The position numbers and the translations under genes are program-made. Positions 38-50,240 of a stretch of 64,000 bases of DNA are shown here, piece by piece (position 1 is the first letter of the stretch; every line of letters starts with the position of its first letter). Origin of the DNA: Amphiscolops sp. MND2022 (lineage: Eukaryota); NCBI GenBank assembly GCA_964187785.1, contig OZ076416.1:47988001-48052000 (forward strand). Reading direction: 5' to 3'. Under the pieces are notes generated by a model. That model was not told where the DNA came from, made no database searches, and saw nothing but the letters and a program-made list of their open reading frames with translations.

Positions 38-143
38 GAGCAGGCTAGCTTAGTGGTTACTTCATCTGAATCACGTCAAGTGACGATTTACCGAAATCCC
101 ACAGAGTGAGATCATTTCCAACCATGAGCGCCATCCTGCTTTT
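38..143 (+). ncRNA. Vault-RNA-like Pol III gene, representative domain-A copy
   Basis: GAGCAGGC-TAGCTTAGTGGTTACTTC ... TTCCAACCATGAGCGCCATCCTGC-TTTTTT. A box TAGCTTAGTGG; stems AGCAGG/CCTGCT and GCTT-A-GTGG/CCAT-GAGC; T6 terminator. The layout matches human vtRNA1-1 as I recall it (GGCTGGCTTTAGCTCAGCGGTTACTTC ... ACCCGCGGGCGCTCTCCAGTCCTTTT). The B-box position is degenerate (TTTCCAACC). Confidence 0.7.
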
Positions 144-521
144 TTCTTTTTTGCCAACACTCGCCGAAGAGTAACATACAAAATGAGTCACTGCTAATTT
201 TGACATAAAGAGAAGCAGAAGTGCAAACAACGTACAATCAGGCAGGAGAAATTCGGGAACTGGCAGGCCACTGTTTGTTTCTCAGTTCTCATTAGTGCTC
301 TCCTATAGTGATTATTTCGATCAATTAATAAAATAATTTCGACTCCTACAAAAGTTTTATCTTTCATTGAAAATTCGTCTTTCCGTGGGAACCGTTTAAC
401 TTTTTTTTGGAGGCAAAGGAAACAACCGCAACGCAACACGGAAAAGAACTCAATTCCTCCTTCAATTGCTTTGGGAAAGAGAATAGGTTGCAAATTAAAG
501 AAAAAAATCGCTGGAAAAAGC

Positions 522-597
522 CTTGAATGAAATATTTCTCCGGGTCCCGTAATCTTACTTTCGAAAATTAACCTTGCCAAGTGTCTCTTGACAAACT
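522..597 (+). promoter_or_regulatory. Conserved upstream block of each unit (candidate external Pol III promoter element)
   Basis: CTTGAATGAAA..TTTC..CCGGTCCC.TAGT and CTTGCCAAATGTCTCTT.A.AAAC are retained in all three monomer types while neighbouring sequence diverges. The second motif lies about 86-63 bp upstream of the core. Function is inferred only. Confidence 0.35.
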
Positions 598-3500
598 GGC
601 AACAAGTTCAAAATTCAAACTTTTATCGGTAAAAAAACTTTTGCTTTTCTCAACTTCCGAGCAGGCTAGCTTAGTGGTTACTTCATCTGAATGACGTCAA
701 GTGACGATTTACCGAAATCTCTCAGAGTGAGATCATTTCCAACCATGAGCGCCATCCTGCTTTTTTTTCTTTTTTGACTGCACTCGCCGAAGAGTAACAT
801 ACAAAATGAGTCACTGCTAATTTTGACATAAAGAAAAGCAGAAGTGCGAACAACGTATACTCAAGCAGGGAAACTTTCGGGAACTGACAGGCCACTGTTC
901 GTTTCTCAGTTCTCATTAGTGCTCTCCTTTAGTGATTGTTTTGATCAATTTATAAAATAATTTCGGCTCCTACAAAAGTTTTATCTTCCATTGAAACTTC
1001 GTCTTTCCGTGGGAACTGTTTAACTTTTCTCTGGAGGCAAAGGAAACAACCGCAACGCAACACGAAAAAGAACTCAATTCTTCCTTCGATAGCTGTGGGA
1101 AACAGAATTGATTGCAAATTGAAGAAAAAAATCGCTGGAAAAAACCTTGAATGAAATATTTCTCCGGGTACCGTAGTCTTACTTTCGGAAATTAACCTTG
1201 CCAAATGTCTCTTAACAAACTGACAACATGTTCAAATTCAAACTTTTATCGTTAAAAAAACTTTTGCTTTTCTCAACTTCCGAGCAGGCTAGCTTAGTGG
1301 TTACTTCATCTGAATCACGTCAAGTGACGATTTACCGAAATCCCACAGAGTGAGATCATTTCCAACCATGAGCGCCATCCTGCTTTTTTCTTTTTTGCCT
1401 ACACTCGCCGAAGAGTAACATACAAAATGAGTCACTGCTAGTTTTGACATAAAGAAAAGCAGAAGTGCAAACAACGTACACTCAGGCAGGAGAAATTCGG
1501 GAAATGGCAGGCCACTGTTTGTTTCTCAGTTCTCATTAGTGCTCTCCTATAGTGATTATTTCGATCAATTAATAAAATAATTTCGACTCCTACAAAAGTT
1601 TTATCTTTCATTGAAAATTCGTCTTTCCGTGGGAACCGTTTAACTTTTTTTTGGAGGCAAAGGAAACAACCGCAACGCAACACGGAAAAGAACTCAATTC
1701 CTCCTTCAATTGCTTTGGGAAAGAGAATAGATTGCAAATTAAAGAAAAAAATCGCTGGAAAAAGCCTTGAATGAAATATTTCTCCGGGTCCCGTAATCTT
1801 ACTTTCGAAAATTAACCTTGCCAAGTGTCTCTTGACAAACTGGCAACAAGTTCAAAATTCAAACTTTTATCGGTAAAAAAACTTTTGCTTTTCTCAACTT
1901 CCGAGCAGGCTAGCTTAGTGGTTACTTCATCTGAATGACGTCAAGTGACGATTTACCGAAATCTCTCAGAGTGAGATCATTTCTAACCATGAGCACCATC
2001 CTGCTTTTTTTCTTTTTTGACTGCACTCGCCGAAGAGTAACATACAAAATGAGTCACTGCTAATTTTGACATAAAGAAAAGCAGAAGTGCAAACATCGTG
2101 TACTCAGGCAGGGAAACTTTCGGGAACTGACAGGCCACTGTTTGTTTCTCAGTTCTCTTTAGTGCTCTCCTATAGTGATTGTTTCGATCACTTAATAAAA
2201 ATAATTTGGACTCCTACGAAAGTTTTATCTTTCATTGAAAATTCGTCTTTCCGTGGGAACCGTTTAACTTTTTTCTGGAGGCTAAGGAAACAACCGCAAC
2301 GCAACACGAAAAAGAACTCAATTCCTCCTTCAATTGCTTTGGGAAAGAGAATTGATTGCAAATTAAAGAAAAAAATCGCTGAAAAAAGCCTTGAATGAAA
2401 TATTTCTCCGGGTCCCGTAGTCTTACTTCCGAAAATTAACCTTGCCAAGTGTCTCTTGACAAACTGGCAACAAGTTCAAAATTCAAACTTTTATCGGTAA
2501 AAAAACTTTTGCTTTTCTCAACTTCCGAGCAGGCTAGCTTAGTGGTTACTTCATCTGAATGACGTCAAGTGACGATTTACCGAAATCTCTCAGAGTGAGA
2601 TCATTTCCAACCATGAGCGCCATCCTGCTTTTTTTCTTTTTTGACTGCACTCGCCGAAGAGTAACATACAAAATGAGTCACTGCTAATTTTGACATAAAG
2701 AAAAGCAGAAGTGCAAACAACGTATACTCAGGCAGGGAAACTTTCGGGAACTGACAGGCCACTGTTTGTTTCTCAGTTCTCATTAGTGCTCTCCTATAGT
2801 GATTGTTTCGATCAATTAATAAAATAATTTCGACTCCTACAAAAGTTTTATCTTCCATTGAAACTTCGTCTTTCCGTGGGAACTGTTTAACTTTTCTCTG
2901 GAGGCAAAGGAAACAACCGCAACGCAACACGAAAAAGAACTCAATTCTTCCTTCGATAGCTTTGGGAAACAGATTTGATTGCAAATTAAAGAAAAGAATC
3001 GCTGGAAAAAACCTTGAATGAAATAGTTCTCCCGGTCCCGTAGTCTTACTTTCGGAAATTAATCTTGCCAAATGTCTCTTCACAAACTGGCAACATGTTC
3101 AAAAGTCAAACTTTTATTGGTAAAAAACTTTTGCTTTTCTCAACTTCCGAGCAGGCTAGCTTAGTGGTTACTTCATCTGAATCACGTCAAGTGACGATTT
3201 ACCGAAATCCCACAGAGTGAGATCATTTCCAACCATGAGCGCCATCCTGCTTCTTTCTTTTTTGACTACACTCGCCGAAGAGTAACATACAAAATGAATC
3301 ACTGCTAATTTTGACATAAAGAAAAGCAGAAGTGCAAACAACGTATACTCAGGCAGGGAAACTTTCGGGAACTGACAGGCCACTGTTTGTTTCTCAGTTC
3401 TCATTAGTGCTCTCCTATAGTGATTGTTTCGATCAATTAATAAAATAATTTCGACTCCTACAAAAGTTTTATCTTCCATTGAAACTTCGTCTTTCCGTGG

Positions 3501-6500
3501 GAACTGTTTAACTTTTCTCTGGAGGCAAAGGAAACAACCGCAACGCAACACGAAAAAGAACTCAATTCTTCCTTCGATAGCTGTGGGAAACAGAATTGAT
3601 TGCAAATTGAAGAAAAAAATCGCTGGAAAAAACCTTGAATGAAATATTTCTCCGGGTACCGTAGTCTTACTTTCGGAAATTAACCTTGCCAAATGTCTCT
3701 TAACAAACTGACAACATGTTCAAATTCAAACTTCTATCGTTAAAAAAACTTTTGCTTTTCTCAACTTCCGAGCAGGCTAGCTTAGTGGTTACTTCATCTG
3801 AATCACGTCAAGTGACGATTTACCGAAATCCCACAGAGTGAGATCATTTCCAACCATGAGCGCCATCCTGCTTTTTTCTTTTTTGCCTACACTCGCCGAA
3901 GAGTAACATACAAAATGAGTCACTGCTAATTTTGACATAAAGAAAAGCAGAAGTGCAAACAACGTACACTCAGGCAGGAGAATTTCGGGAACTGACAGGC
4001 CACTGTTTGTTTCTCAGTTCTCTTTAGTGCTCTCCTATAGTGATTGTTTCGATCACGTAATAAAAATAATTTGGACTTCTACAAAAATTTTATCTTTCAT
4101 TGAAAATTCGTCTTTCCGTGGGAACCGTTTAACTTTTTTCTGGAGGCAAAGGAAACAACCGCAACGCAACACAAAAAAGAACTCAATTCTTCCTTCGATA
4201 GCTTTGGGAAAGAGATTTGATTGCAAATTAAAGAAAAAAATCGCTGGAAAAAGCCTTAAATGAAATATTTCTCCGGGTCCCGTAGTCTTACTTTCGAAAA
4301 TTAACCTTGCCAAATGTCTCTTGACAAATTGGCAACAAGTTCAATATTCAAACTTTTATCGGTAAAAAAAACTTTTGCTTTTCTCAACTTCCGAGCAGGC
4401 TAGCTTAGTGGTTACTTCATCTGAATGACGTCAAGTGACGATTTACCGAAATCTCTCAGAGTGAGATCATTTCCAACCATGAGCGCCATCCTGCTTTTTT
4501 TCTTTTTTGACTACACTCGCCGAAGAGTAACATACAAAATGAATCACTGCTAATTTTGACATAAAGAAAAGCAGAAGTGCAAACAACGTATACTCAGGCA
4601 GGGAAACTTTTGGGAACTGACAGGCCACTGTTTGTTTCTCAGTTCTCATTAGTGCTCTCCTATAGTGATTGTTTCGATCAAATAATAAAATAATTTCGAC
4701 TCCTACAAAAGTTTTATCTTCCATTGAAACTTCGTCTTTCCGTGGGAACTGTTTAACTTTTCTCTGGAGGCAAAGGAAACAACCGCAACGCAACACGAAA
4801 AAGAACTCAATTCTTCCTTCGATAGCTTTGGGAAACAGATTTGATTGCAAATTAAAGAAAAAAAATCGCTGGAAAAAACCTTGAATGAAATATTTCTCCC
4901 GGTCCCGTAGTCTTACTTTCGGAAATTAATCTTGCCAAATGTCTCTTCACAAACTGGCAACATGTTCAAAAGTCAAACTTTTATCGGTAAAAAATTTTTG
5001 CGTTTCTCAACTTCCGAGCAGGCTAGCATAGTGGTTACTTCATCTGAATGACGTCAAGTGACGATTTACCGAAATCTCACAGAGTGAGATCAATTCCAAC
5101 CATGAGCGCTATCCTGCTTTTTTCTTTTTTTGACTACACTCGCCGAAGGGTAACATACAAAATAAGTCACAGCTAGTTTTGACATTTAAAAAAAAGCAGA
5201 AGTGCAAACAACGCATACTCAGGCAGGGAAACATTCGGGAACTGACAGGCCACTGTTTGTTTCTCAGTTCTCATTAGTGCTCTCCTATAGTGATTGTTTC
5301 GATCATTTAATAAAATAATTTCGACTCCTACAAAAGTTTTAACTTTCATTGAAAATTCGTCTTTCCGTGGGAACCGTTTAACTTTTCTCTGGAGGCAAAG
5401 GAAACAACCGCAACGCAACACGAAAAAGAACTCAATTCTTCCTTCGATAGCTTTGGGAAACAGAACTGATTGCAAATTAAAGAAAAAAATTGCTGGAAAA
5501 AACCTTGAATGAAGTATTTCTCCCGGTCCCGTAGTCTTACTTTCGGAAATTAACCTTGCCAAATGTCTCTTCACAAACTGACAACATGTTCAAATTCAAA
5601 CTTTTATCGGTAAAAAAAACTTTTGCTTTCCTCAACTTCCGAGCAGGCTAGCCTAGTGGATACTTCATCTGAATGACGTCAAGTGACGATTTACCGAAAT
5701 CTCACAGAGTGAGATCATTTCCAACCTTGAGTGCCATCCTGCTTTTTTTCTTTTTTGACTACACTCGCCGAAGAGTAACATACAAATTGAGTCACTGCTA
5801 ATTTTGACATAAAGAAAAGCAAAAGTGCAAACAACGTACACTCAGGCAGGGAAAAATTCGGGAACTGACAGGCCACTGTTTGTTTCTCAGTTCTCATTAG
5901 TGCTCTCCTATAGTGATTGTTTCGATCATTTAATAAAATAATTTCGACTCCTACAAAAGGTTTATCTTTCATTGAAAACTCGTCTTTCCGAGAGAACCGT
6001 TTAACTTTTCTCTGGAGCCAAAGGAAACAACCGCAACGCAACACGAAAAAGAACTCAATTCTTCCTTCGATAGCTTTGGGAAAGAGAATTGATTGCAAAT
6101 TTTAAAAAAATGCTGGAAAAGACCTTGAATGAAAAATTTCTCCCGGTCCCGTAGTCTTACTTTCGGAAATTAATCTTGCCAAATGTCTCTTCACAAACTG
6201 GCAACATGTTCAAAAGTCAAACTTTTATCGATAAAAAACTTTTGCTTTTCTCAACTTCCGAGCAGGCTAGCATAGTGGTTACTTCATCTGTATGACGTCA
6301 AGTGACGATATACCGAAATCTAACAGAGTGAGATCCTTTCCAACCATGAGCGCCATCCTGCTTTTTTCTTTTTTGACTACACTCGCCGAAGAGTAACATA
6401 CAAATTGGGTCACTGCTATTTTGACATAAAGAAAAGCAGTTGTGCAAACAACGTATACTCAGGCAGGGAAACATTCGGGAACTGACAGGCCACTGTTTGT

Positions 6501-9480
6501 TTCTCAGTTCTCATTAGTGCTCTCCTATAGTGATTATTTCGATCAATTAATAAAATAATTTCGACACCTACAAAAGTTTTATCTTTCATTGAAAATTCGT
6601 CTTTCCGTGGGAACCGTTTAACTTTTCTCTGGAGGCAAAGGAAACAACCGCAACGCAACACGAAAAAGAACTCAATTCTTCCTTCGATAGCTTTGGGAAA
6701 GAGAATTGATTGCAAATTTAAAAAATTCGCCGGAAAAAACCTTGAATGAAACATTTCCCCGGGTCCCGTAGTCTTACTTTCGAAAATTATTCTTGCCAAA
6801 TGTCTCTTCACAAACTGACAACATGTTCAAATTCAAACTTTTATCGGTAAAAAAACTTTTGCTTTCCTCAACTTCAGAGCAGGCTAGCTCAGTGGTTACT
6901 TCATCTGAATCACGTCAAGTGACGATTTACCGAAATCTCACAGAGTGAGATCATTTCCAACCATGAGCGCCATCCTGCTTTTTCTTTTTTGACTACACTC
7001 GCCGAAGAGTAACATACAAATTGGGTCACTGCTATTTTGACATAAAGAAAAGCAGAAGTGCAAACAACGTATACTCAGGCAGGGAAACATCCGGGAACTG
7101 ACAGGCCACTGTTTGTTTCTCAGTTCTCATTAGTGCTCTCCTATAGTGATTATTTCGATCAATTAATAAAAAAATTTCGACTCTCACAAAAGTTTTATCT
7201 TTCATTGAAAATTCGTCTTTCCGTGGGAACCGTTTAACTTTTCTCTGGAGGCAAAGGAAACAACCGCAACGCAACACGAAAAAGAACTCAATTCTTCCTT
7301 CGATAGCTTTGGGAAAGAGAATTGAGTGCAAATTTAAAAAAATCGCCGGAAAAAACCTTGAATGAAAAATTTCTCCGGGTCCCGTAGTCTTACTTTCGAA
7401 AATTATTCTTGCCAAATGTCTCTTCACAAACTGACAACATGTTCAAATTCAAACTTTTATCGGTAAAAAAACTTTTGCTTTCCTCAACTTCAGAGCAGGC
7501 TAGCTCAGTGGTTACTTCATCTGAATCACGTCAAGTGACGATTTACCGAAATCTCACAGAGTGAGATCATTTCCAACCATGAGCGCCATCCTGCTTTTTC
7601 TTTTTTGACTACACTCGCCGAAGAGTAACATACAAATTGGGTCACTGCTATTTTGACATAAAGAAAAGCAGTAGTGCAAACAACGTTTACTCAGGCAGGG
7701 AAACATTCGGGAACTGACAGGCCACTGTTTGTTTCTCAGTTCTCATTAGTGCTCTCCTATAGTGATTGTTTCAATCAATTAAGAAAATATTTTCGACTCC
7801 TACAAAAGTTTTATCTTTCATTGAAAATTCGTCTTTCCGTGGGAACCGTTTAACTTTTCTCTGGAGGCAAAGGAAACAACCGCAACTTAACACGAAAAAG
7901 AACTCCATTCTTCCTTCGATAGCTTTGTGGGAAAGAGAATTGATTGCAAATTTAAAAAAATCGCTGGAAAAAACCTTGAATGAAACATTTCTCCGGGTCC
8001 CGTAGTCTTACTTTCGAAAATTAATCCTGCCAAATGTCTCTTCACAAACTGACAACATGTTCAAAATTCAAACTTTTATCGCTAAAAACTTTTGCTTTTC
8101 TCAACTTCCGAGCAGGCTAGCTTAGTGGTTACTTCATCTGGATCACGTCAAGTGATGATTTGCCGAAATCTCACAGAGTGAGATCATTTCCAACCATGAG
8201 CGCCATCCTGCTTTTTTCTTTTTTGACTACACTCGCCGAATAGTAACATACAAAATGAGTCACTGCTAATTTTGACATGAAGAAAAGCAGAAGTGCAAAC
8301 AACGTATTCTCAGGCAGGCAAAAGTTCGGGAACTGACAGGCTACTGTTTGTTTCTCAGTTCTCATTAGTGCTCTCCTATAGTGATTGTTTCGATCATTTA
8401 ATAAATTAATTTCGACTCCTACAAAAAGTTTATCTCTCATTGAAAATTCGTCTTTCCGTGGGAACCGTTTAACTTTTCTCTGGAGGCAAAGGAAACAACC
8501 GCAACGCAACACAAAAAAGAACTCATTTCTTTTTTCGATAGCTTTGGCAAACAGACTTGATTGCAAATTAAAGAAAAAAATCGCTGGAAAAGACCTTGAA
8601 TGAAATTTTTTCTCCCGGTCCCGTAGTCTTACTTTCGGAAATTAATCTTGCCAAATGTCTCTCCACAAACTGGCAACATGTTCAAAATTCAAACTTTTAT
8701 CGCTAAAAACTTTTGCTTTTCTCAACTTTCGAGCAGGCTAGCTTAGTGGTTACTTCATCTGAATGACGTCAAGTAACAATTCACCGAAATCTCTCAGAGT
8801 GAGATCATTTCCAACCATGAGCGCCATCCTGCTTTTTTTACTACATTCGCCGAAGAGTAACATACAAATTGAGTCACTGCTAATTTTGACATAAAGAAAA
8901 GCAGAAGTGCAAACAACGTATACTCAGACAGGGAAAAATTCGGGAACTGGCAGGCCACTGCTTGTCTCTCAATTCTCATTTGTGCTCTCCTATAGTGATT
9001 GTTTCGCTCATTTAATCAAAAAAATTGGACTCCTACAAAAGTTTTATCTTTCATTGAAAATTCGTCTTTCCGTGGGAACCGTTTAACTTTTCTCTGGAGG
9101 CAAAGGAAACAACCGCAACGCAACACGGAAAAGAACTCCATTCTTCCTTCGATAGCTTTGGGAAAGGGAATTGATTGCAAATTAAAGAAAAAATCGCTGG
9201 AAAAAACCTTGAATGAAATTTTCCTCCGGGTCCCGTAGTCTTACTTTCGAAAATTAATCTTGCCAAATGTCTCTTGACAAACTGGCAACAAGTTCAAAAT
9301 TCAAACTTTTATCGGTACAAAAACATTTGCTTTTCTCAACTACCGAGCAGGCTAGCTTAGTGGTTACTTCATCTGTATGAAGTCAAGTGACGATTCACCG
9401 AAATCTCACAGAGTGAGATCATTTCCAACCTTGAGTGCCATCCTGCTTTTTTTCTTTTTTGACTACACTCGCCGAAGAGT

Positions 9481-12400
9481 AACATTTAACAGACAAAATA
9501 GGTTACTCTTCATTTTGGCACAAAGAAAAGCAGAAGTGCAAACAACGTATACTCAGGCAGGAAAAATTACGGGAACTAACAGGGCAGTATTTGGCTTTCA
9601 GTTCTCATTGATGTTCTCATACATTGATTGTTTCGATCATTTAATAAAACAACTTCGACTTCTAAATAGGTTTTATTGTTGATAGAAAATTCGTGTTTAC
9701 GAGGAAAAGGTCTAACTTTTCTCTTCTCTGGAGTCAAGGGAAGCAACCGAACCGCTACACAAAAAACAACTCAATTTTTCCTTCGATAGCTTTGGGAAGC
9801 ATGGTCAATTGAAAAGTAAAGGGAAAAGTCGATGGAAAAAAGCTTAAATGAAACGTTTCTCCCGGTCCCGTAGTCTCACTTTTGGAAATCAATCTTCCCA
9901 AATGTCTCTTCACAAACCGGAAACCTGTTCAGAAACCCACGTTTTTTTGGCGGTAAAAAACTTTTGCATGCCCTAATTTCCGAGCCGGCTAGCTTAGAGT
10001 TTACTTCATCTGATAAACGTCAAGTGACGATTCACCAAAATCGCACAAGGTGAGATCTTTTCCAACCATTAGCGCCAACCTGCTTTTGTCTTTTTGACTA
10101 CATAAGCTGAAGAGTAACATGTAACAGACAAAAAAGGTTACTCATGTTTATGGCACAAAGAAAAGCAGAAGTGCAAACAACGTATACTCAGGCAGGAAAA
10201 ATTACGGGAACTAACAGGCCAGTATTTGGCTTTCGGTTCTCATTGATGTTGTTCTCATTCATTGATTGTTTCGATCATTCAATAAAACAATTTCGACTCC
10301 TAAATAAGTTTTCTTAATGATAGAAAATTCGTGTTTACGAGGAAAAGGTCTAACATTTTTCTTCTCTGGAGTCAAGGAAGCAACCGAACCGCTACACAAA
10401 AAACAACTCAATTTTTCCTTCGATAGCTTTGGGAAGCATAACCAAGTGAAAAGTAAAAGGAAAAATCGATGGAAAAAAGCTTGAATGAAACATTTATCTC
10501 GGTCCCGTAGTCTCACTTTCGGAAATCAATCTTGCCAAATGTCTCTTCACAAACCCGCAACCAGCTCAGAAATCAAAAGTTTTGTCGGTATAAAAAACTT
10601 TTGCTTTCCTCAACTTCCGAGCAGGCGAGCTTAGTGGTTACTTCATCTGAATGACGTCAAGTGACGATTAACCAAACTCTCACAGAGTGAGATCATTCGC
10701 AACCTTTAGCGACATCCTGCTTTTGTCTTTTTGACTACTTATGCCGAAGAATAACATGTAACACACAGAATAAGTTACTACTATTTTGGCACAAAGAAAA
10801 GCAGAAGTGCAAACAAGGTATATTCAGGCAGGAAACAAACTCAGGATCTGACAGCCCACTCTTTGCTTCTAATATTCCATTCGTATTCTCGTATAGCGAT
10901 TGAGTCGGTCATTTAATAAAACATTCGACCCTCAAAGCGGTTTTATCTTTGAAACAGAATCGCGTTACCGAGAGAACCGTTCAACTTTTCCCTTATCTAG
11001 AGGCAAGGGAAGCCACCGGAATGCAACACAAAAATCAACTCAATTCTTCTTTCGATAGCTCTGGAAAATAGAAAGAAATGCAAAATGAAGGAAACAATTG
11101 ATGGAAAAAAGCTTGAATGAACCATTTCACCAGGTCCCGTGGTCTTCATTTCGGATATCAATCATGCCAAATGTCTCTTCACAAACCGGCATCCTGTTCA
11201 GAAATCCAAGTTTTTTTGGCGGTAAAGAACTTTTGCATGCCCTAATTTCCGAGCAGGCTAGCTTAGTGGTTACTTCATCTGAATGACGTCATTTGACGAT
11301 TAACCAAAATCTCAGAGAGTGAGATCATTTCCAACCATAAGCGCCATCGTGTTTTTGTCTTTTTGACTACATACGTCGAAGAGTACCATAGAAATTAGGG
11401 TACTGCAATTTTTGGCACAAAGGAATGCAGAAGTGCAAACAACCTATACTCAGGCAGGAAAAATTACGGAACTAACGCCCACTATTTGGCTCTCAGTTCT
11501 CATTGACGTTTTCGTATATTGATTGATTGTTTCGATCTTTTAATAAAACAATTTCGACTCCTACAGAAGTTTTATCTTTCAAAGAAAAATTCGTGTTTAC
11601 GAGGAAAAGATCTAACTTTTCTCTTCTCTGGAGTCAAGGGAAGCAACCGAACCGCTACACAAAAAACAACTCAATTTTTTCTTCGAGAGCTTTGGGAAGC
11701 ATGATCAATTGAAAAGTAAAGGGAAAAGTCGATGAAAAAAAGCTTGAATGAAACATTTCTCCCGGTCCCTTAGTCTCGCTTTCGGAAATCAATCTTCCTA
11801 AATGTCTCTTCACAAACCGGAAACCTGTTCAGAAACCCAAGTTTTTTTGGCGGTAAAAGACTTTTGCATGCCCTAATTTCCGAGCCGGCTAGCTTAGAGC
11901 TTACTTCATCTGATAAACGTCAAGTGACGATTCACCAAAATCGCACAAGGTGAGATCATTTCCAACCATTAGCGCCAACCTGCTTTTGTCTTTTTGACTA
12001 CATAAGCTGAAGAGTGACAAGTAACAGACAAAATAGGTTACTCATGTTTTTGGCACAAAGAAAAGCAGAAGTGCAAACAACGTATACTCAGGCAGGCAAA
12101 ATTTTGGGAACTAACAAGCCAGTATTTGGCTTTCGGTTCTCATTGATGTTGTTCTCATTTATTGATTTTTTCGATCATTCAATAAAACAATTTCGACTCC
12201 TAAATAAGTTTTCTTAATGATAGAAAATTCGTGTTTACGAGGAAAGGTCTAACTTTTTTTCTCTGGAGTGAAGGAAGCAACCGAACCTCTACACAAAAAA
12301 CAACTCAATTTTTTTTCTTCGATAGCTTTGGGAAGCATAACCAAGTGAAAAGTAAAAGGAAAAATCGATGGAAAAAAGCTTGAATGAAACATTTCTCTCG

Positions 12401-26800: not shown

Positions 26801-29800
26801 ACTACCACAACGCAACACAAAATACAACTCAATTCTTCCGTCGATAGTTTTGGGAAAGAGAATCTATTCAAAAATGTAGGAAAAAATTGAAACGAAAAAT
26901 GCTTGAATGAAACATTTCCCCGGTCCCCTAGTATCATTTTCGGAAATGAATCTTGCCAAATGTCTTTTCAAAAACCGCCAACCTGGTTGAAAATCAAACT
27001 CTTTTGACATTAAAAACTTTTTGCTTTCCTTAATTTCCGAGCAGGCTAGCTCAGTGGTTACTTCATCTGACAAACGTTAAGTGACGATTCACCAAAATCT
27101 CACAGAGTGAGATCATTTCCAACCATGAGCGCCATCCTGCTTTTGTTTTTTTACTACACTTGCCAAAAAACACAAAAAAAGGACAAGGCAGGAAACAATA
27201 CGGGAACTGACAGGCCTCTGTTTGTTTCTACGCTCTCATTGGTGCTCTCCTAGGATGATTGTTTCGATCTTTCAGTTAAAAAACTTCGACTCTTAAAGAC
27301 AGTTTATCTTAAACAAGCTAATTCGTGTTCCCGAGAAGGCCCTCTAACTTTTCTATTATCTGAAGGCAAGGGAAACTACCAGAACGCAACACAAAATACA
27401 ATTCAATTCTTCCGTCGATAGTTTTGGGAAAGAGAATCTATTCAAAAATGTAGAAAAAAATTGAAACGAAAAAAGCCCAAATAAAACATTTCCCCGGTCC
27501 CCTAGTATCATTTTCGGAAATGAATCTTGCCAAATGTCTCTTCAAAAACCGCCAACCTGGTTGAAAATCAAACTCTTTTGACATTGAAAACTTTTTGCTT
27601 TCCTTAATTTCCGAGCAGGCTAGCTTAGTGGTTACTTCAACTGATAAACGTTAAGTGACGATTCACCAAAATCTCACAGATTGAGATCATTTCCAACCAT
27701 GAGCACCATCCTGCTTTTGTTTTTTTTACTACACTTGCCAAAAAACACAAGAAAAGGACAAGGCAGGGAACAATACGGGAACTGACAGGCCTCTGTTTGT
27801 TTCTCCGCTCTCATTGGTGCTCTCCTAGGATGATTGTTTCGATCTTTCAACTAAAAAAGCTTCGACTCTTAAAGACAGTTTATCTTAAACAGGCTAATTC
27901 GTGTTCCCGAGAAGGCCCTCTAACTTTTCTATTATCTGAAGGCAAGGGAAACTACCACAACGCAACACAAAATACAACTCAATTCTTCCGTCGATAGTTT
28001 TGGGAAAGAAAATCTATTCAAAAATGTAGGAAAAAATTGAAACGAAAAATGCTTGAATGAAACATTTCCCCGGTCCCCTAGTATCATTTTCGGAAATGAA
28101 TCTTGCCAAATGTCTCTTCAAAAACCGCCAACCTGGTTGAAAATCAAACTCTTTTGACATTAAAAACTTTTTGCTTTCCTTAATTTCCGAGCAGGCTAGC
28201 TTAGTGGTTACTTCATCTGACAAACGTTAAGTGACGATTCATCAAAATCTCACAGAGTGAGATCATTTCCAACCATGAGCGCCATCCTGCTTTTGTTTTT
28301 TTTACTACACTTGCCAAAAAACACAAAAAAGGACAAGGCAGGGAACAATACGGGAACTGACAGGCCTCTGTTTGTTTCTCCGCTCTTCTTGGTGCTCTCC
28401 TAGGATGATTGTTTCGATCTTTCAGTTAAAAAACTTCGACTCTTAAAGACAGTTTATCTTAAACAGGCTAATTCGTGTTCCCGAGAAGGCCCTCTAACTT
28501 TTCTATTATCTGAAGGCAAGGGAAACTACCACAACGCAACACAAAATACAACTCAATTCTTCCGTCGATAGTTTTGGGAAAGAGAATCTATTCAAAAATG
28601 TAGGAAAAAATTGAAACGAAAAATGCTTGAATGAAACATTTCCCCCGGTCCCCTAGTATCATTTTCGGAAATGAATCTTGCCAAATGTCTCTTCAAAAAC
28701 CGCCAACCTGGTTGAAAATCAAACTCTTTTGACATTAAAAACTTTTTGCTTTCCTTAATTTCCGAGCAGGCTAGCTTAGTGGTTACTTCATCTGATAAAC
28801 GTTAAGTGACGATTCATCAAAATCTCACAGAGTGGGATCATTTCCAACCATGAGCGCCATCCTGCTTTTGTTTTTTTTACTACACTTGCCAAAAAACACA
28901 AAAAAGGACAAGGCAGGGAACAATACGGGAACTGACAGGCCTCTGTTTGTTTCTCCGCTCTTCTTGGTGCTCTCCTAGGATGATTGTTTCGATCTTTCAG
29001 TTAAAAAACTTCGACTCTTAAAGACAGTTTATCTTAAACAGGGTAAATCGTGTTCCCGAGAAGGCCCTCTAACTTTTCTATTATCTGAAGGCAAGGGAAA
29101 CTACCAGAACGCAACACAAAATACAACTCAATTCTTCCGTCGATAGTTTTGGGAAAGAGAATCTATTCAAAAATGTAGGAAAAAATTGAAACGAAAAAAG
29201 CTTGAATGAAACATTTCCCCCGGTCCCCTAGTATCATTTTCGGAAATGAATCTTGCCAAATGTCTCTTCAAAAACCGCCAACCTGGTTGAAAATCAAACT
29301 CTTTTGACATTAAAAACTTTTTGCTTTCCTTATTTTCCGAGCAGGCTAGCTTAGTGGTTACTTCATCTGATAAACGTTAAGTGACGATTCACCAAAATCT
29401 CACAGAGTGAGATCATTTCCAACCATGAGCGCCATCCTGCTTTCGTTTTTTTTTTACTACACTTGCGAAAAAACACCAAAAAAGGAAAAGGCAGGGAACA
29501 AAACGGGAACTGAAAAGACTCTGTTTGTTTCTCCGCTCTCATTGGTGTTCTCCTAGGATGATGGTTTCGATCTTTCCGTTAACAAACTTCGACTCTTAGA
29601 GACGTTTTATCTTAAACAGGCTAATTCGTGCTCCCGAGAGAGCCCTCTAACTTTTCTACTACCTGAAGGCAAAGGCAACAACCAGAACGCAATACAAAAT
29701 GCAACTCAATTCTTCCGTCGATAGTTTTGGGAAAGAGAATCTATTCAAAAATGTAGGAAAAAATTGAAACGAAAAAAGCTTGAATGAAACATATCCCCCG

Positions 29801-32800
29801 GTCCCCTAGTATCATTTTCGGAAATGAATCTTGCCAAACGTCTCTTCAAAAACCGCCAACCTGGTTGAAAATCAAACTCTTTTGACGTTAAAAACTTTTC
29901 GCTTTCCTTAATTTCTGAGCAGGCTAGCTTAGTGGTTACTTCATCTGATAAACGTTAAGTGACTATTCACCAAAATCTCACAGAGTGAGATCATTTCCAA
30001 CCATGAGCGCCATCCTGCTTTTGTTTTTTTTACTACACTTGCCAAAAAAACACAAAAAAAGACAAGGCAGGGAACAATACGGGAACTGACAGGCCTCTGT
30101 TTGTTTCTCCGCTCTCATTGGTGCTCTCCTAGGATGATTGTTTTGATCTTTCAGTTAAAAAACTTCGACTCTTAAAGACAGTTTATCTTAAACAGGGTAA
30201 TTCGTGTTCTCGAGAAGGCCCTCTAACTTTTCTATTATCTGAAGGCAAGGGAAACTACCAGAACGCAACACAAAATACAACTCAATTCTTCCGTCGATAG
30301 TTTTGGGAAAGAGAATCTATTCAAAAATGTAGGAAAAAATTGAAACGAAAAAAGCTTGAATGAAACATTTCCCCCGGTCCCCTATTGTCATTTTCGGAAA
30401 TGTATCTTGCCAATGTCTCTTCAGAAACCGCCAACCTGGTTGAAAATCAAACTCTTTTGACATTAAAAACTTTTTTCTTTCCTTAATTTCCGAGCAGGCT
30501 AGCTTAGTGGTTACTTCATCTGATAAACGTCAAGTGACGATTCACCAAAATCGCACAAGGTGAGATCATTTCCAACCATTAGCGCCATCCTGCTTTTGTT
30601 TTTCTTCCTACACTTGCCAAAAAACACAAAAAAAGGACAAGGCAGGGAACAATACGGGAACTGACAGGCCTCTGTTTGTTTCTCCGCTCTCATTGGTGCT
30701 CTCCTAGGATGATTGTTTCGATCTTTCCGTTAACAAACTTCGACTCTTAGAGACGTTTTATCTTAAACAGGCTAATTCGTGCTCCTGAGAGAGCCCTCTA
30801 ACTTTTCTACTATCTGACGGCAAAGGCAACAACCAGAACGCAATACAAAATGCAACTCAATTCTTCCGTCGATAGTTTTGGGAAAGAGAATCTATTCAAA
30901 AATGTAGGGAAAAATTGAAACGAAAAAAGCTTGAATGAAACATATCCCCCGGTCCCCTAGTATCATTTTTGGAAATGAATCTTGCCAAACGTCTCTTCAA
31001 AAACCGCCAACCTGGTTGAAAATCAAACTCTTTTGACATTAAAAACTTTTCGCTTTCCTTAATTTCTGAGCAGGCTAGCTTAGTGGTTACTTCATCTGAT
31101 AAACGTTAAGTGACGATTCACCAAAATCTCACAGAGTGAGATCATTTCCAACCATGAGCGCCATCCTGCTTTTGTTTTTTTTACTACACTTGCCAAAAAA
31201 AACACAAAAAAAGACAAAGCAGGGAACAATACGGGAACTGACAGGCCTCTGTTTGTTTCTCCGCTCTCATTTGTGCTCTCCTAGGATGATTGTTTCGATC
31301 TTTCCGTTAACAAACTTCGACTCTTAGAGACGTTTTATCTTAAACAGGCTAATTCGTGCTCCCGAGAGAGCCCTCTAACTTTTCTACTATCTGCAGGCAA
31401 AGGCAACAACCAGAACGCAACACAAAATGCAACTCAATTCTTCCGTCGATAGTTTTGGGAAAGAGAATCTATTCAAAAATGTAAGAAAAAATTGAAACGA
31501 AAAAAGCTTGAATGAAACATATCCCCCGGTCCCCTATTATCATTTTCGGAAATGAATCTTGCCAAACGTCTCTTCAAAAACCGCCAACCTGGTTGAAAAT
31601 CAAACTCTTTTGACAATAAAAACTCTTCGCTTTCCTTAATTTCCGAGCAGGCTAGCTTAGTGGTTACTTCATCTGAAAAACGTTAAGTGACGATTCACCA
31701 AAATCTCACAGAGTGAGATCATTTGCAACCATGAGCGCCATCCTGCTTTTGTTTTTTTCACTACACTTGCAAAAAGCACAAAAAAAGGACAAGGCAGGGA
31801 ACAAAACGGGAACTGACAGGCCTCTGTTTGTTTCTACGCTCTCATTGGTGCTCTCCTAGGATGATTGTTTCGATCTTTCAGTTAAAAAACTTCGACTCCT
31901 AAAGACAGTTTATCTTAAACAGGCTAATTCGTGTTCTCGAGAAGGCCCTCTAACTATTCTACTATCTGAAGGCAAGGGAAACTACCAGAACGCAACACAA
32001 AATACAACTCAATTCTTCCGTCGATAGTTTTGGGAAAGAGAATCTATTCAAAAATGTAGGAAAAAATTGAAACGAAAAAAGCTTGAATGAAACAGTTCCC
32101 CCGGTCCCCTATTATCATTTTCGGAAATGAATCTTGCCAAACGTCTCTTCAAAAACCGCCAACCTGGTTGAAAATCAAACTCTTTTGACAATAAAAACTT
32201 TTCGCTTTCCTTAATTTCCGAGCAGGCTAGCTTAGTGGTTACTTCATCTGAAAAACGTTAAGTGACGATTCACCAAAATCTCACAGAGTGAGATCATTTG
32301 TAACCATGAGCGCCATCCTGCTTTTGTTTTTTTCACTACACTTGCAAAAAGCACAAAAAAAGGACAAGGCAGGGAACAAAACGGGAACTGACAGGCCTCT
32401 GTTTGTTTCTACGCTCTCATTGGTGCTCTCCTAGGATGATTGTTTCGATCTTTCAGTTAAAAAACTTCGACTCCTAAAGACAGTTTATCTTAAACAGGCT
32501 AATTCGTGTTCTCGAGAAGGCCCTCTAACTATTCTACTATCTGAAGGCAAGGGAAACTACCAGAACGCAACACAAAATACAACTCAATCCTTCCGTCGAT
32601 AGTTTTGGGAAAGAGAATCTATTCAAAAATGTAGGAAAAAATTGAAACGAAAAAAGCTTGAATGAAACAGTTCCCCCGGTCCCCTATTATCATTTTCGGA
32701 AATGTATCTTGCCAATGTCTCTTCAGAAACCGCCAACCTGGTTGAAAATCAAACTCTTTTGACATTAAAAACTTTTTTGCTTTCCTTAACTTCCGAGCAG

Positions 32801-35800
32801 GCTAGCTTAGTGGTTACTTCATCTGATAAACGTTAAGTGACGATTCACCAAAATCTCACAGAGTGAGATCATTTCCAACCATGAGCGCCATCCTGCTTTT
32901 GTTTTTTTCACTACACTTGCAAAAAACACAAAAAAGGACAAGGCAGAGACAAAACGGGAACTGACAGGCCTCTGTTTGTTTCTCCGCTCTCATTGGTGCT
33001 CTCCTAGGATGATTGTTTCGATCTTTCAGTTAAAAAACTTCGACTCTTAAAGAATGTTTATCTCAAACAGGCTAATTCGTGTTCCCGAGAAGGCCCTCTA
33101 ACTGTTCTACTATCTGAAGGCAAGGGAAACTACCAGAACGCAACACAAAATACAACTCAATTCTTCCGTCGATAGTTTTGGGAAAGAGAATCTATTCAAA
33201 AATGTAGGAAAAAATTGAAACGAAAAAAGCTTGAATGAAACAGTTCCCCCGGTCCCCTATTATCATTTTCGGAAATGAATCTTGCCAAACGTCTCTTCAA
33301 AAACCGCCAACCTGGTTGAAAATCAAACTCTTTTGACAATAAAAACTTTTCGCTTTCCTTAATTTCCGAGCAGGCTAGCTTAGTGGTTACTTCATCTGAA
33401 AAACGTTAAGTGACGATTCACCAAAATCTCACAGAGTGAGATCATTTGCAACCATGAGCGCCATCCTGCTTTTGTTTTTTTCACTACACTTGCAAAAAGC
33501 ACAAAAAAAGGACAAGGCAGGGAACAAAACGGGAACTGACAGGCCTCTGTTTGTTTCTACGCTCTCATTGGTGCTCTCCTAGGATGATTGTTTCGATCTT
33601 TCAGTTAAAAAACTTCGACTCCTAAAGACAGTTTATCTTAAACAGGCTAATTCGTGTTCTCGAGAAGGCCCTCTAACTATTCTACTATCTGAAGGCAAGG
33701 GAAACTACCAGAACGCAACACAAAATACAACTCAATTCTTCCGTCGATAGTTTTGGGAAAGAGAATCTATTCAAAAATGTAGGAAAAAATTGAAACGAAA
33801 AAAGCTTGAATGAAACAGTTCCCCCGGTCCCCTATTATCATTTTCGGAAATGTATCTTGCCAATGTCTCTTCAGAAACCGCCAACCTGGTTGAAAATCAA
33901 ACTCTTTTGACATTAAAAACTTTTTTGCTTTCCTTAACTTCCGAGCAGGCTAGCTTAGTGGTTACTTCATCTGATAAACGTTAAGTGACGATTCACCAAA
34001 ATCTCACAGAGTGAGATCATTTCCAACCATGAGCGCCATCCTGCTTTTGTTGTTTTCACTACACTTGCAAAAAACACAAAAAAGGACAAGGCAGAGACAA
34101 AACGGGAACTGACAGGCCTCTGTTTGTTTCTCCGCTCTCATTGGTGCTCTCCTAGGATGATTGTTTCGATCTTTCAGTTAAAAAACTTCGACTCTTAAAG
34201 AATGTTTATCTCAAACAGGCTAATTCGTGTTCCCGAGAAGGCCCTCTAACTGTTCTATTATCTGAAGGCAAGGGAAACTACCAGAACGCAACACAAAATA
34301 CAACTCAATTCTTCCGTCGATAGTTTTGGGAAAGAGAATCTATTCAAAAATGTAGGAAAAAATTGAAACGAAAAAAGCTTGAATGAAACATTTTCCCCGG
34401 TCCCCTAGTATCATTTTCGGAAATGAATCTTGCCAAATGTCTCTTCAGAAACCGCCAACCTGGTTGAAAATCAAACTCTTTTGACATTAAAAACTTTTTG
34501 CTTTCCTTAAATTCCGAGCAGGCTAGCTTAGTGGTTACTTCATCTGATAAACGTTAAGTGACGATTCACCAAAATCTCACAGAGTGAGATCATTTCCAAC
34601 CATGAGCGCCATCCTGCTTTTGTTTTTTTCACTACACTTGCCAAAAAACACAAAAAAGGACAAGGCAGAGACAAAACGGGAACTGACAGTCCTCTTTTTG
34701 TTTCTCCGCTCTCATTGGTGCTCTCCTAGGATGATTGTTTCGATCTTCCAGTTAAAAAACTTCGACTCTTAAAGACAGTTTATCTTAAACAGGCTAATTC
34801 GTGTTCCCGAGAAGGCCCTCTAACTGTTCTATTATCTGAAGGCAAGGGAAACTACCAGAACGCAACACAAAATACAACTCAATTCTTCCGTCGATAGTTT
34901 TGGGAAAGAGAATCTATTCAAAAATGTAGGAAAAAATTGAAACGAAAAAAGCTTGAATGAAACATTTTCCCCGGTCCCCTAGTATCATTTTCGGAAATGA
35001 ATCTTGCCAAATGTCTCTTCAGAAACCGCCAACCTGGTTGAAAATCAAACTCTTTTGACATTAAAAACTTTTTGCTTTCCTTAATTTCCGAGCAGGCTAG
35101 CTTAGTGGTTACTTCATCTGATAAACGTTAAGTGACGATTCACCAAAATCTCACAGAGTGAGATCATTTCCAACCATGAGCGCCATCCTGCTTTTGTTTT
35201 TTTCACTACACTTGCCAAAAAACAGAAAAAAGGACAAGGCAGAGACAAAACGGGAACTGACAGGCCTCTTTTTGTTTCTCCGCTCTCATTGGTGCTCTCC
35301 TAGGATGATTGTTTCGATCTTCCAGTTAAAAAACTTCGACTCTTAAAGACAGTTTATCTTAAACAGGCTAATTCGTGTTCCCGAGAAGGCCCTCTAACTG
35401 TTCTATTATCTGAAGGCAAGGGAAACTACCAGAACGCAACACAAAATACAACTCAATTCTTCCGTCGATAGTTTTGGGAAAGAGAATCTATTCAAAAATG
35501 TAGGAAAAAATTGAAACGAAAAAAGCTTGAATGAAACATTTCCCCCGGTCCCTTAGTATCATTTTCGGAAATGAATCCTGCCAAACGTCTCTTCAAAAAC
35601 CGCCAACCTGATTGAAAATCAAACCCTTTTGACATTAAAAACTTTTGCTTTCCTTAATTTCCGAGCAGGCTAGCTTAGTGGTTACTTCATCTGATAAACG
35701 TTAAGTGACGATTCACCAAAATCTCACAGAGTGAGATCATTTCCAACCATGAGCGCCATCCTGCTTTTGTTTTTTTCACTACACTTGCCAAAAACACAAA

Positions 35801-37705
35801 AAAAGGACAAGGCAGAGACAAAACGGGAACTGACAGGCCTCTGTTTGTTTCTCCGCTCCCATTGGTGCTCTCCTAGGATGATTGTTTTGATCTTCCAGTT
35901 AAAAAACTTCGACTCTTAAAGACAGTTTATCTCAAACAGGCTAATTCGTGTTTCCGAGAAGGCCCTCTAACTGTTCTATTATCTGAAGGCAAGGGAAACT
36001 ACCAGAACGCAACACAAAAAAAAACAACTCAATTCTTCCGTCGATAGTTTTGGGAAAGAGAATCTATTCAAAAATGTAGGAAAAAATTGAAACGAAAAAA
36101 GCTTGAATGAAACATTTCCCCTGGTCCCCTAGTATTATTTTCGGAAATGAATCTTGCCAAATGTCTCTTCAAAAACCGCCAACCTGGTTGAAAATCAAAC
36201 TTTTTTGACATTAAAAACTTTTTGCTTTCCTTAATTTCCGAGCAGGCTAGCTTAGTGGTTACTTCATCTGATAAACGTTAAGTGACGATTCACCAAAATC
36301 TCACAGAGTGAAATCATTTCCAACCAAGAGCGCCATCCTGCTTCTGTTTTTTTTTACTACACTTGCAAAAAAACACCAAAAAAGGACATAGCAGGGAACA
36401 ATACGGGAACTGACAGGCCTCTGTTTGTTTCTCCGCTCTCATTGGTGTTCTCCTAGGATGATTGTTTCGATCTGCCAATAAGAGTTTCGACTCTTGAAGA
36501 CGTTTCGTCTTTCATAGCTAATTCGTGTTTCCGAGAGAACAGTTTAACTTTTTTATTATCTGAAGGCAAGGGAAACAACCGGAACGCAACACAAAAAAAT
36601 TCAATTCACACTTCGATAGTTTTGGGAAGGAGAATCTCTTTCGAAATGTAGGAAAATATCGAAAGGAAAAAAGCTTAAATGAAACATTTCTCCCGGTCCC
36701 CTAGGGTTACTTTCGGAAATCGATCTTGCCAAAAGTCTCTTCAAACACCGCCAACTAGGTCGAAAATCAAACTTTTTTGACATTAAAAAATATTTGCTTT
36801 CCCTAATTTCCGAGCAGGCTATCTTAGTGGTTACTTCATCTGATAAACGTTGAGTGACGATTCACCAAAATATCACAGAGTGAGATCATTTCCAATCATG
36901 AGCGCCATCCTGCTTTTGTCTTTTTTGACAACACTCGCCAAACAACATACAAAAAAAGGACAGCTATTTTTGATACAAAGAATAGCAGAACTGCATACAA
37001 CGTATACTCAGGCAGGGAAAAATTCGGGATTTGACAGACCACTGTTTGTTTCTCTGTACTCATTGGTGTTCTCCTAGGATGATTGTTTCGGTCTGCCAAT
37101 AAGAATTTCGACTCTTAAAGACGTTTTAATTTTCATAGCTGTTTAGTGTTTCCGAGGGAACCGTTTCACTATGAAAATATCTGAAGGCAAGGGAACCAAC
37201 CGAAACGCAACACAAAAAAACAACCCGATTCTTCCTTCGATATGTTTGGAAAACACAGTCAGTTTCAAAATGAGAGAACAAAATTGGTAGAAAAAAACTT
37301 GAACGAAACATTTCACCCGGTCCCGTGGTCTTACTTTTGGAACTCAATCTTGCCGAATGTGTCTTCACAAACCGGCAATCTGTTCAAAAATCTAAGTTTT
37401 TTGGCGGTAAAAAACTTTTGCTTCCCTCAAAGTCGGAGCTGGCTAGCTTAGTGGTTACTTCATCTGATAGACGTTAAGTGACGATTCTTCAAATTCTCAC
37501 AGAGTGAGATCATTTCCAACCATGAGCATCAACCTGCCTTTGTCTTTTTACTACACTCGCCGAAGAGTAAAATACAAAACAAGTTACTTGTATTTTTGAC
37601 ACAAAGAAAAGCAGAAGTGTAAACAACGTATATTCAGGCAGGCAGAAAATCGGGAACTGACAGGCCACTGTTTGTTTCTTAGTTACCATTCGTGTTCTCG
37701 TTCGA
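20856..37705 (+). repeat. Array domain C: ~29 monomers, mostly 573-578 bp and highly homogeneous; longer diverged monomers at both edges
   Basis: Marker spacing is 572-578 bp from 22438 to 36808, and 625-646 bp at 21167-22438 and 36808-37433. Confidence 0.92.
35090..35195 (+). ncRNA. Vault-RNA-like Pol III gene, representative domain-C copy
   Basis: Same A box, panhandle and T-run (CCTGCTTTTG followed by a longer T run). Internal hairpins CGTTA-AG-TGACG and ATCTCAC-AGA-GTGAGAT. Confidence 0.68.
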
Positions 37706-37744
37706 ACTCCGCCGAAGATGGAAGTTCTGTCCCTGTTCGACACG

Positions 37745-49514: not shown

Positions 49515-49621
49515 GAGCTGGCTAACTCAGCTGTAACCTCTTTTAAAATGGTCGTTGTAATTATGAACGAAGTTGATCTCACAGAGTGAGATTACTTCCA
49601 ACCGACAGCGCCATCCTGCTT
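49515..49621 (+). pseudogene. Solitary decayed vault-RNA-like copy outside the array
   Basis: GAGCTGGCTAACTCAGCTGTAACCTC ... ATCTCACAGAGTGAGATTACTTCCAACCGACAGCGCCATCCTGCT. A box mutated and terminator lost (TTCT). Weak homology to the array spacer continues to about 49720 (AAGTG..CAAATACTCAG). Confidence 0.65.
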
Positions 49622-50240
49622 CTGAAATTTCGTGAAATCGGAAACAAAGAAACGTTTTAAAAAAGGTTACCCCCAATAATTAAACAAAGCATTGGAAGTG
49701 AACGACAAATACTCAGTCTAGCGTTAGTCTTCGAATTATCTTTACTACCATATTGATGTTTCTGGCGGAAGCAGTGACACAATCTTTATTTTCCGCCCAT
49801 ATTCCATATGGGAAAGGAAAATATATAAACCATACGGTTTTTTTAAAATATTGCTAAGCACCAAATTTATATTCAAATTGAAGGGTGTCACCCACATAAT
49901 TCACCTCACATAAAATAGCTTCGTGCGATATGTATGTGTAAAGATTTTTGGAATTTTTTGGGAATGACGAAAAGGACCCCGAAAACAACAAAATTTTGCA
50001 CAAGTTGTCGGCTGTATATGGAACTCCTGTAGTATCAATACTATAATTTTTGTAAACTTGCCCTCTCTGAGAATGAGCAGGCAACGACATGTGAATTGTT
50101 CTTATCAGACCCATCATCGACACTGAGCGTTACTTGTGATCCCTTCGAGACACCTCAGGCAGTAGTTAGTAATTCGGAGTAAACGGAATCAAGGAAATCA
50201 CCTCCCACTTTTTGCCTCGTTGATCCGACATACCCAAGCC

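What the first reader, a model, noticed from the sequence alone, without database searches (positions are those of the whole stretch)
38..36350. Within-array variation preserves RNA base-pairing
Seen: the U-G pair of the inner helix becomes C-G in units with GCTCAGTGG (about 6885, 7500, 27050) and U-A in B3 units (AACCATAAGC, e.g. 11333). Hairpin CGTCA-AG-TGACG (A, B) becomes CGTTA-AG-TGACG in domain C, giving a U-G wobble. Hairpin ATCTCAC-AGA-GTGAGAT varies to GTGGGAT (21240, 21885, 28833), again a wobble. The core is far more conserved between A, B and C than the spacer. Inference: selection acted at RNA level, so at least ancestral units were functional. CpG decay could explain some of the changes.
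Basis: partly seen in the sequence, partly recalled or inferred. Interest (0 to 1): 0.7.

Follow-up and report, generated by a model that had tools for sequence, protein, structure and literature searches.

The report
Vault RNA gene array drifting neutrally
The repeats are about 63 head-to-tail copies of a vault RNA gene, and the differences among copies break the RNA's base pairs as often as chance predicts, so they do not show structure-preserving selection; two of the three blocks do keep the RNA's end regions unchanged.

Summary
The array (38-37543, + strand) is 63 tandem 108-nt genes matching Rfam Vault RNA (RF00006) over the full model. 45 copies score above the gathering threshold. This scan had already noted the same stretch as a vault-RNA-like array (s1-151493).

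They are a selected subset. Among within-family derived alleles at paired sites, 13 keep a pair and 26 break one. The spacer mutation spectrum predicts 29% keepers; 33% were observed (p=0.33). Paired sites change as often as unpaired ones.

The column-shuffle test shows no covariation: 93.7% of cells paired against 93.9% shuffled, and one double change against 1.7 expected. The RNAalifold covariation term is about zero. Only 19 of 63 copies keep all 27 pairs.

"Core more conserved than spacer" holds for A against C only, and it lies in the terminal domains: 0/75 differences against 22% in both the central domain and the spacer (p=8e-8). The C-to-U wobble lies in the part that drifts like the spacer, and the U-A variant belongs to block B, a decayed three-unit higher-order repeat.

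Verdict: a vault RNA gene cluster under concerted evolution with weak array-level purifying selection. The covariation inference is not supported. No expression data were available.

The parts
38..9452 (+). Block A: 16 vault RNA gene units, period about 621 bp. Box A is perfect and the terminator is a run of 5-9 T (broken by a C in unit 3149). Only 3 of 16 copies keep all 27 pairs.
   Evidence: Rfam RF00006, 34.0-48.8 bits; unit list; intact count
9982..20373 (+). Block B: 18 units forming a three-unit higher-order repeat (B1, B2, B3; about 1.9 kb). The cores are decayed, with 2-7 broken pairs in each. Box A is lost in B1. Rfam gives no hit for B1 and 25.8-41.2 bits for B2 and B3; three B3 units (11251, 13153, 19638) are at or above the gathering score of 34.
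   Evidence: nhmmer; sequences; B cores diverge about like the spacer
21171..36919 (+). Block C: 28 units, period about 575 bp, the most homogeneous block. 16 of 28 copies keep all pairs and 8 cores are identical over columns 1-104.
   Evidence: RNAalifold on C alone recovers P1, P2, H3 and H4
35090..35197 (+). Representative intact gene (block C consensus). Outer stem at columns 1-7/98-104, inner helix at 11-20/84-92, hairpins at 37-40/45-48 and 59-65/69-75, then TTTT-G-T7.
   Evidence: fold -28.3 kcal/mol, z -3.0; Rfam 44.5 bits
35006..35068 (+). Upstream region of that gene: a conserved block at -84..-64 and an A-rich TATA-like run at -31..-22. Both recur before every unit.
   Evidence: conservation profile; upstream sequences. 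A promoter role is inferred, not tested.
37436..37543 (+). Last, degenerate unit (3 broken pairs). Spacer homology stops near 37700.
49515..49625 (+). Dispersed, diverged vault-like copy. The 17-nt hairpin ATCTCAC-AGA-GTGAGAT is identical to the array's. Box A is degenerate. It has no T-run, none of the array's upstream blocks and no Rfam hit.
   Evidence: nhmmer E=3e-13

Best explanation
The stretch is a tandem cluster of RNA polymerase III genes for vault RNA. Each unit has a 108-nt gene with a perfect internal box A, a T-run terminator and conserved upstream blocks that include an A-rich TATA-like run. The cluster evolves like other multicopy small-RNA arrays. Point mutations hit single copies almost neutrally, because about 60 copies are redundant. 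Unequal crossing-over and gene conversion spread or erase the variants. Selection acts only weakly and at the level of the array: it has kept the two terminal domains of the RNA identical in blocks A and C, while the central domain and the spacer drift at the same rate. They are not compensatory evolution. Shown here: family match, fold, motifs, mutation counts and tests. Inferred: transcription, vault association, and the roles of selection and of conversion.
For: Identity: RF00006 hits over model positions 1-99 on the + strand, 45 above the gathering score, and no other family at E<=1. 63 array copies plus one solo copy were found by nhmmer. The panhandle fold appears in A and C representatives with z -2.2 to -3.0. 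Box A matches TRGCNNAGTGG exactly. No covariation: 93.7% of cells paired against 93.9% shuffled (444/500 shuffles as high); 1 double change against 1.7 expected. The result is the same for A+C, A, C, P1+P2 only, H3+H4 only and an alternative register. RNAalifold covariation terms range from -0.57 (better) to +0.69 (worse) kcal/mol, and over all copies the panhandle is not even recovered. Events: 13 keep, 26 break, 38 unpaired. The expected keep share of 0.29 comes from 527 spacer events, and the binomial p is 0.33. The paired share of core events is 43/81 against 0.53 expected. Mean ddG of observed variants equals the expectation in A (1.06 vs 1.06 kcal/mol). Array-level constraint: A against C differ at 0/75 terminal columns, 6/27 central columns and 101/462 spacer columns (p=8e-8). 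Core polymorphism is about 0.68 of the spacer's (odds ratio 0.63, p=2e-4). Decay of B: 0/18 copies intact, and B-B terminal-domain divergence of 16% is close to the spacer's. Conversion: unit 30492 is C-like at both ends and B1-like at columns 40-89.
Against: There are no RNA data: no RNA run holds the stretch, so transcription of any block is unproven. In block C the observed variants destabilise the consensus structure less than random ones (0.57 vs 1.03 kcal/mol, one-sided P=0.022, uncorrected). This is not seen with MFE or ensemble energies, but a weak structural filter there cannot be excluded. One real double change exists: pair 40-45 goes from C-G through U-G to U-A in unit 21817, and the solo copy at 49515 may have the same U-A by my hand alignment (the MAFFT alignment does not place it so). 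There is no canonical box B; the best match has 4 of 11 mismatches. Event counts rest on family consensuses, and conversion tracts can carry several changes as one event.
Confidence: 0.85

Rival explanations
1. One reading: variation within the array has been filtered by selection for RNA secondary structure, so that changes at paired sites tend to keep the pairs through wobble intermediates and compensatory changes.
For: The listed wobble variants are real. There is one double change at pair 40-45 in unit 21817. In block C the ddG on the consensus structure is 0.57 against 1.03 expected, P=0.022. None of the 6 fixed A-C differences breaks a pair; the chance of that is 0.06.
Against: There are 26 pair-breaking events against 13 pair-keeping ones, equal to the neutral expectation. 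The shuffle tests are null for every subset and every structure tried. The covariation energy is about zero. High-frequency A variants break hairpin H4 (columns 62 and 64). 44 of 63 copies have at least one broken pair. The P=0.022 does not survive six tests and is absent with MFE and ensemble energies.
Confidence: 0.1
2. Core conservation reflects DNA-level promoter constraint only (internal box A and a B-like element for TFIIIC), not any property of the RNA.
For: Box A is perfect in A and C. The stretch after box A (columns 21-27) is invariant in all 63 copies, the decayed ones included. Upstream blocks are as conserved as the core.
Against: The 3' strands of both helices (columns 83-102) have no known promoter role, yet they show 0 differences between A and C against 22% in the spacer. 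The sequence fits the family's structure with no non-standard pair in the three Rfam alignments printed, and with double changes relative to the model consensus. No canonical box B is present.
Confidence: 0.1
3. The identity of the A and C terminal domains is due to recent gene conversion between blocks rather than to selection.
For: Conversion does occur in the array: unit 30492 is a chimera. Concerted evolution is evident from the near-identical repeats.
Against: Conversion would have had to homogenise columns 1-29 and 57-102 separately, while sparing the 27 central columns between them (22% diverged) and the flanking spacers.
Confidence: 0.05

Closest known systems
Vault RNA (Rfam RF00006), the Pol III transcript of vault particles. 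[quoted passage not shown] 2009 and Mosig et al. 2009).
   Same: Length of about 100 nt. The 5' and 3' ends pair into a panhandle. Box A is followed by GGTTACTTC. The ends are conserved and the centre is variable. The gene ends in a T-run. The full-length covariance-model match scores up to 48.8 bits.
   Different: About 63 copies lie in one head-to-tail array. By comparison, human has four genes at two loci (PMC7904556). No canonical box B is present. Many copies are decayed. Association with vault proteins was not tested. I found no paper describing a vault RNA tandem array. The Hydractinia genome paper lists vault RNA and describes tandem arrays for other small RNAs (PMC11067881).
Tandem arrays of other small-RNA genes (5S rRNA, tRNA, U1, U2, U5, U6 and U3), as described in Hydractinia and Nematostella (PMC11067881).
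   Same: Evenly spaced units of a few hundred bases with near-identical genes and spacers, homogenised within blocks.
   Different: The gene here is vault RNA. Three diverged blocks lie side by side, and one of them is a decayed higher-order repeat.

Membership tests
Vault RNA (RF00006) | Covariance-model score at or above the curated gathering score over the whole model | tested here: met
   45 copies score 34.0-48.8 bits against a gathering score of 34, over model positions 1-99. 10 more score 25.8-34. The 7 B1 copies, the end unit 37436 and the solo copy give no hit.
Vault RNA (RF00006) | 5' and 3' ends pair into a panhandle with an inner helix | tested here: met
   RNAfold on A and C representatives and RNAalifold on A or C alone give P1 (7 bp) and P2 (9-10 bp). 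There is no non-standard pair in the three Rfam alignments printed. B copies do not fold this way.
Vault RNA (RF00006) | Internal Pol III box A | tested here: met
   TRGCNNAGTGG is matched with 0 mismatches at column 9 in A, C and some B3 units, with 2 mismatches in B1 and 1 in B2.
Vault RNA (RF00006) | Internal Pol III box B (GGTTCGANNCC) | tested here: not met
   The best match has 4 of 11 mismatches. Only the looser GWTCRANNC fits, with 1 mismatch at column 73. This feature comes from vertebrate genes (PMC7904556). Upstream elements may compensate, but that is untested.
Vault RNA (RF00006) | Pol III terminator (T-run) directly after the 3' stem | tested here: met
   Runs of 5-9 T in A (broken by a C in unit 3149), and mostly TTTT-G-T(5-9) in B and C.
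Vault RNA (RF00006) | Transcribed, and bound in vault particles (MVP, TEP1) | not testable with these tools
   No RNA run holds the stretch. The scan's notes on this genome do not mention a major vault protein gene.
   no excess in any test.

The most novel reading that the evidence does not exclude
The array is an actively transcribed, greatly amplified vault RNA locus. Blocks A and C would encode two RNA isoforms with identical terminal domains and distinct central domains, analogous to the human vault RNA paralogues but produced from dozens of genes each. This would be a vault RNA tandem array that I found in no paper of the held library, with dosage and isoform control by array structure.
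Probability: 0.25. Interest if true: 0.5.

Novelty: new member of a known kind. Interest (0 to 1): 0.25.

Why it matters
The claim under test was that paralogue variation inside one array already demonstrates RNA-level selection. That would have been a cheap route to validating a structure from a single genome. It does not work here. Single-sided transitions to wobble pairs are expected in about 29% of mutations at paired sites, and pair-breaking changes are just as common as chance predicts. The array does show where constraint really lies, in the terminal domains. It also shows a dead higher-order repeat being amplified regardless of function, which is a clean example of concerted evolution in a Pol III gene cluster. 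The large copy number of vault RNA genes is unusual, but that belongs to a separate finding of this scan.

Tried and rejected
- **Parsimony on a FastTree of whole units.** The first script failed on gap columns. The second gave artefactual back-and-forth changes around units 21171 and 21817. I replaced it by counting derived alleles against family consensuses.
- **RNA evidence.** The look-up of sequencing runs returned only four runs of one sample and no RNA run. Laying them gave short collapsed contigs that fit several places. These confirm the repeat exists in the reads but say nothing on expression or on single copies.
- **Relatives for cross-species covariation.** Two metagenome pattern scans found nothing. 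No animal genome collection is on hand.
- **Stadler et al. 2009.** The paper is not held in the library.
- **Organism.** Not identified. An atlas look-up of a retroelement integrase gave no useful taxa.
- **The solo copy at 49515 as an outgroup.** It keeps H4. By hand alignment it may have U-A at pair 40-45, but the MAFFT alignment does not support that placement. Its inner helix is broken or shifted, so it is too decayed for a count.
- **CpG decay as the driver.** Rejected as a major factor, because CpG observed/expected is 0.9.
Full report
**What is there.** A scan of the window against Rfam gives 45 matches above the gathering score, all to Vault RNA (RF00006). All lie on the + strand and cover model positions 1-99, between 38 and 36347. 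With a permissive threshold ten more appear, and no other family reaches E<=1. A profile built from these cores finds eight further copies. Seven of them form a subtype with a damaged box A. It also finds one diverged copy at 49515. In all, 63 ungapped 108-nt cores stand head to tail from 38 to 37543. The first bases of the window are already the upstream part of a unit, so the array probably continues to the left. Spacer homology ends near 37700.

The units fall into three blocks:
- Block A: 16 units of about 621 bp.
- Block B: 18 units forming a three-unit higher-order repeat, B1-B2-B3.
- Block C: 28 units of about 575 bp.

Each gene has a perfect box A, a T-run after the 3' stem, an A-rich TATA-like run at about -31 to -22 and a conserved block at about -84 to -64. 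Representatives of A and C fold into the vault panhandle. This comprises an outer stem (columns 1-7/98-104), an inner helix (11-20/84-92) and two central hairpins (37-40/45-48 and 59-65/69-75), with z-scores of -2.2 to -3.0. The scan had already noted this stretch as an array of about 63 vault-RNA-like genes (s1-151493). My Rfam result agrees with that note.

**The observation.** They are U14>C in 6877, 7493 and 27039; G89>A in the B3 units; C40>U in 27 of the 28 block C units and in the end unit 37436; and A72>G in 21171, 21817 and 28764. One detail needs correcting: the first hairpin is a 4-bp stem with a tetraloop, because a 2-nt loop is not possible.

**Is it more than chance?** No. I tested the 27 pairs on the 63-sequence alignment. 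93.7% of cells form a standard pair, against 93.9% after shuffling the 3' partners (444 of 500 shuffles are at least as high). One pair has a change on both sides, against 1.7 expected. The covariation score is 0.047 against 0.048. Repeating the shuffle for A+C, A alone, C alone, the two Rfam-supported helices alone, the two central hairpins alone and an alternative register of the inner helix gives the same null result each time. RNAalifold on all copies does not even recover the panhandle, and its covariation term is -0.57 kcal/mol. On A or C alone it recovers the structure, with covariation terms of only -0.43 and -0.35.

**Counting events.** I counted each derived allele once per family against the family consensus. 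Paired sites carry 13 changes that keep a pair and 26 that break one, plus four at pairs already broken. Unpaired sites carry 38. The neutral spectrum was taken from 527 within-family spacer events (272 transitions, 255 transversions). It predicts that 29% of mutations at paired sites keep a pair. The observed share is 33% (p=0.33). Paired sites take 43 of 81 core events, against 53% expected. Pair-breaking variants are not confined to singletons. Only 19 of the 63 copies keep all 27 pairs: A 3/16, B 0/18, C 16/28 and the end unit 0/1.

A thermodynamic version of the test gives observed equal to expected in A (1.06 kcal/mol). In C there is a hint: 0.57 against 1.03, one-sided P=0.022. This is uncorrected for six tests and is absent with MFE or ensemble energies. 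CpG observed/expected is 0.90 in the array and 0.89 outside it, so CpG decay is not a strong force here.

**Where constraint really is.** Between the A and C consensuses the core differs at 5.9% and the spacer at 21.9% (p=7e-5). Among the B families, core and spacer diverge alike. The six A-C differences all lie at columns 33, 34, 35, 40, 52 and 56. The central domain (6/27, 22%) has therefore drifted exactly like the spacer (101/462, 22%). The terminal domains show 0/75 differences (p=8e-8). This is the pattern the Rfam Vault model shows, conserved ends and a variable centre. It includes the 3' strands of both helices, which have no known promoter role.

B terminal domains are 7-11% diverged from A and C. 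That is about half the spacer value, and the difference is significant in four of the six comparisons. Among themselves they are 16% diverged, which is like the spacer. That fits genes that were once constrained and then decayed. The B copies of one subtype are nearly identical (one core event among six B2 units). The dead repeat was therefore amplified recently, independent of function. Unit 30492 is C-like at both ends and B1-like at columns 40-89, which is a conversion tract. Within families, the core carries about 0.68 of the spacer's polymorphism (p=2e-4). This is modest, and part of it may come from alignment noise in the spacer.

**Other evidence.** In the three Rfam alignments printed no pair is non-standard, and several pairs differ from the model consensus on both sides. 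This supports the helices over deep time better than the array can. The solo copy at 49515 keeps the 17-nt H4 hairpin exactly. By my hand alignment it may carry U-A at pair 40-45, but the MAFFT alignment does not place it that way. It has a degenerate box A, no terminator, none of the array's upstream blocks and no Rfam hit.

No RNA run holds the stretch. The four runs found are from one sample, and they yield short collapsed contigs. Two metagenome scans for relatives found nothing.

**Comparison with what is known.** Vault RNAs are Pol III transcripts with box A and box B, and human has four genes at two loci (PMC7904556). [quoted passage not shown] I found no paper describing a tandem array of vault RNA genes. 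The Hydractinia genome paper describes tandem arrays for many other small RNAs and lists vault RNA among the families found (PMC11067881). Membership in RF00006 is met on score, fold, box A and terminator. A canonical box B is not present. Particle association cannot be tested here.

**Verdict.** The variants are real, but the inference drawn from them is not supported. The array is a vault RNA gene cluster under concerted evolution. Single copies mutate almost neutrally, array-level purifying selection holds the terminal domains in A and C, and block B is decayed. As a test of within-array covariation the finding is ordinary. The unusual copy number belongs to the sibling finding.

Noticed in passing
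35006-35026 and 35059-35068 (recurring before every unit): Spacer blocks are as conserved among the A, B and C consensuses as the gene itself: a block at -84..-64 and an A-rich TATA-like run at -31..-22. They are likely upstream Pol III promoter elements. Two further conserved blocks lie further upstream in the spacer.
   Followed up: partly
30492-30599: This block C unit carries B1-type letters at columns 40-89 and C-type letters at both ends. It is a gene-conversion chimera between blocks.
   Followed up: partly
15687-16079 and 17349-17740: Two B2 units have a spacer shortened to give a 393-bp unit. They were duplicated together with their neighbours, which shows recent segmental amplification inside the decayed block.
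   Followed up: no
49515-49625: A dispersed, diverged vault-like copy 12 kb beyond the array. Its H4 hairpin is identical to the array's, but it has no promoter blocks, no terminator and no Rfam hit. It is probably a pseudogene.
   Followed up: partly
37961-38035 and 37695-37725: A tRNA-like piece with box A-like and box B-like motifs and an Arg-UCU-like anticodon loop lies just beyond the array end. A similar 3' fragment lies exactly at the array end. ARAGORN calls no tRNA. These are probably SINE fragments.
   Followed up: no
44642-48579: Broken Gypsy-type retroelement reading frames (reverse transcriptase and integrase zinc-binding domain) lie between the array and the solo copy.
   Followed up: no
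58-64 of each unit (columns 21-27): The unpaired stretch TACTTCA after box A is invariant in all 63 copies, the decayed ones included. It is the most conserved part of the gene, and it is not a paired region.
   Followed up: no
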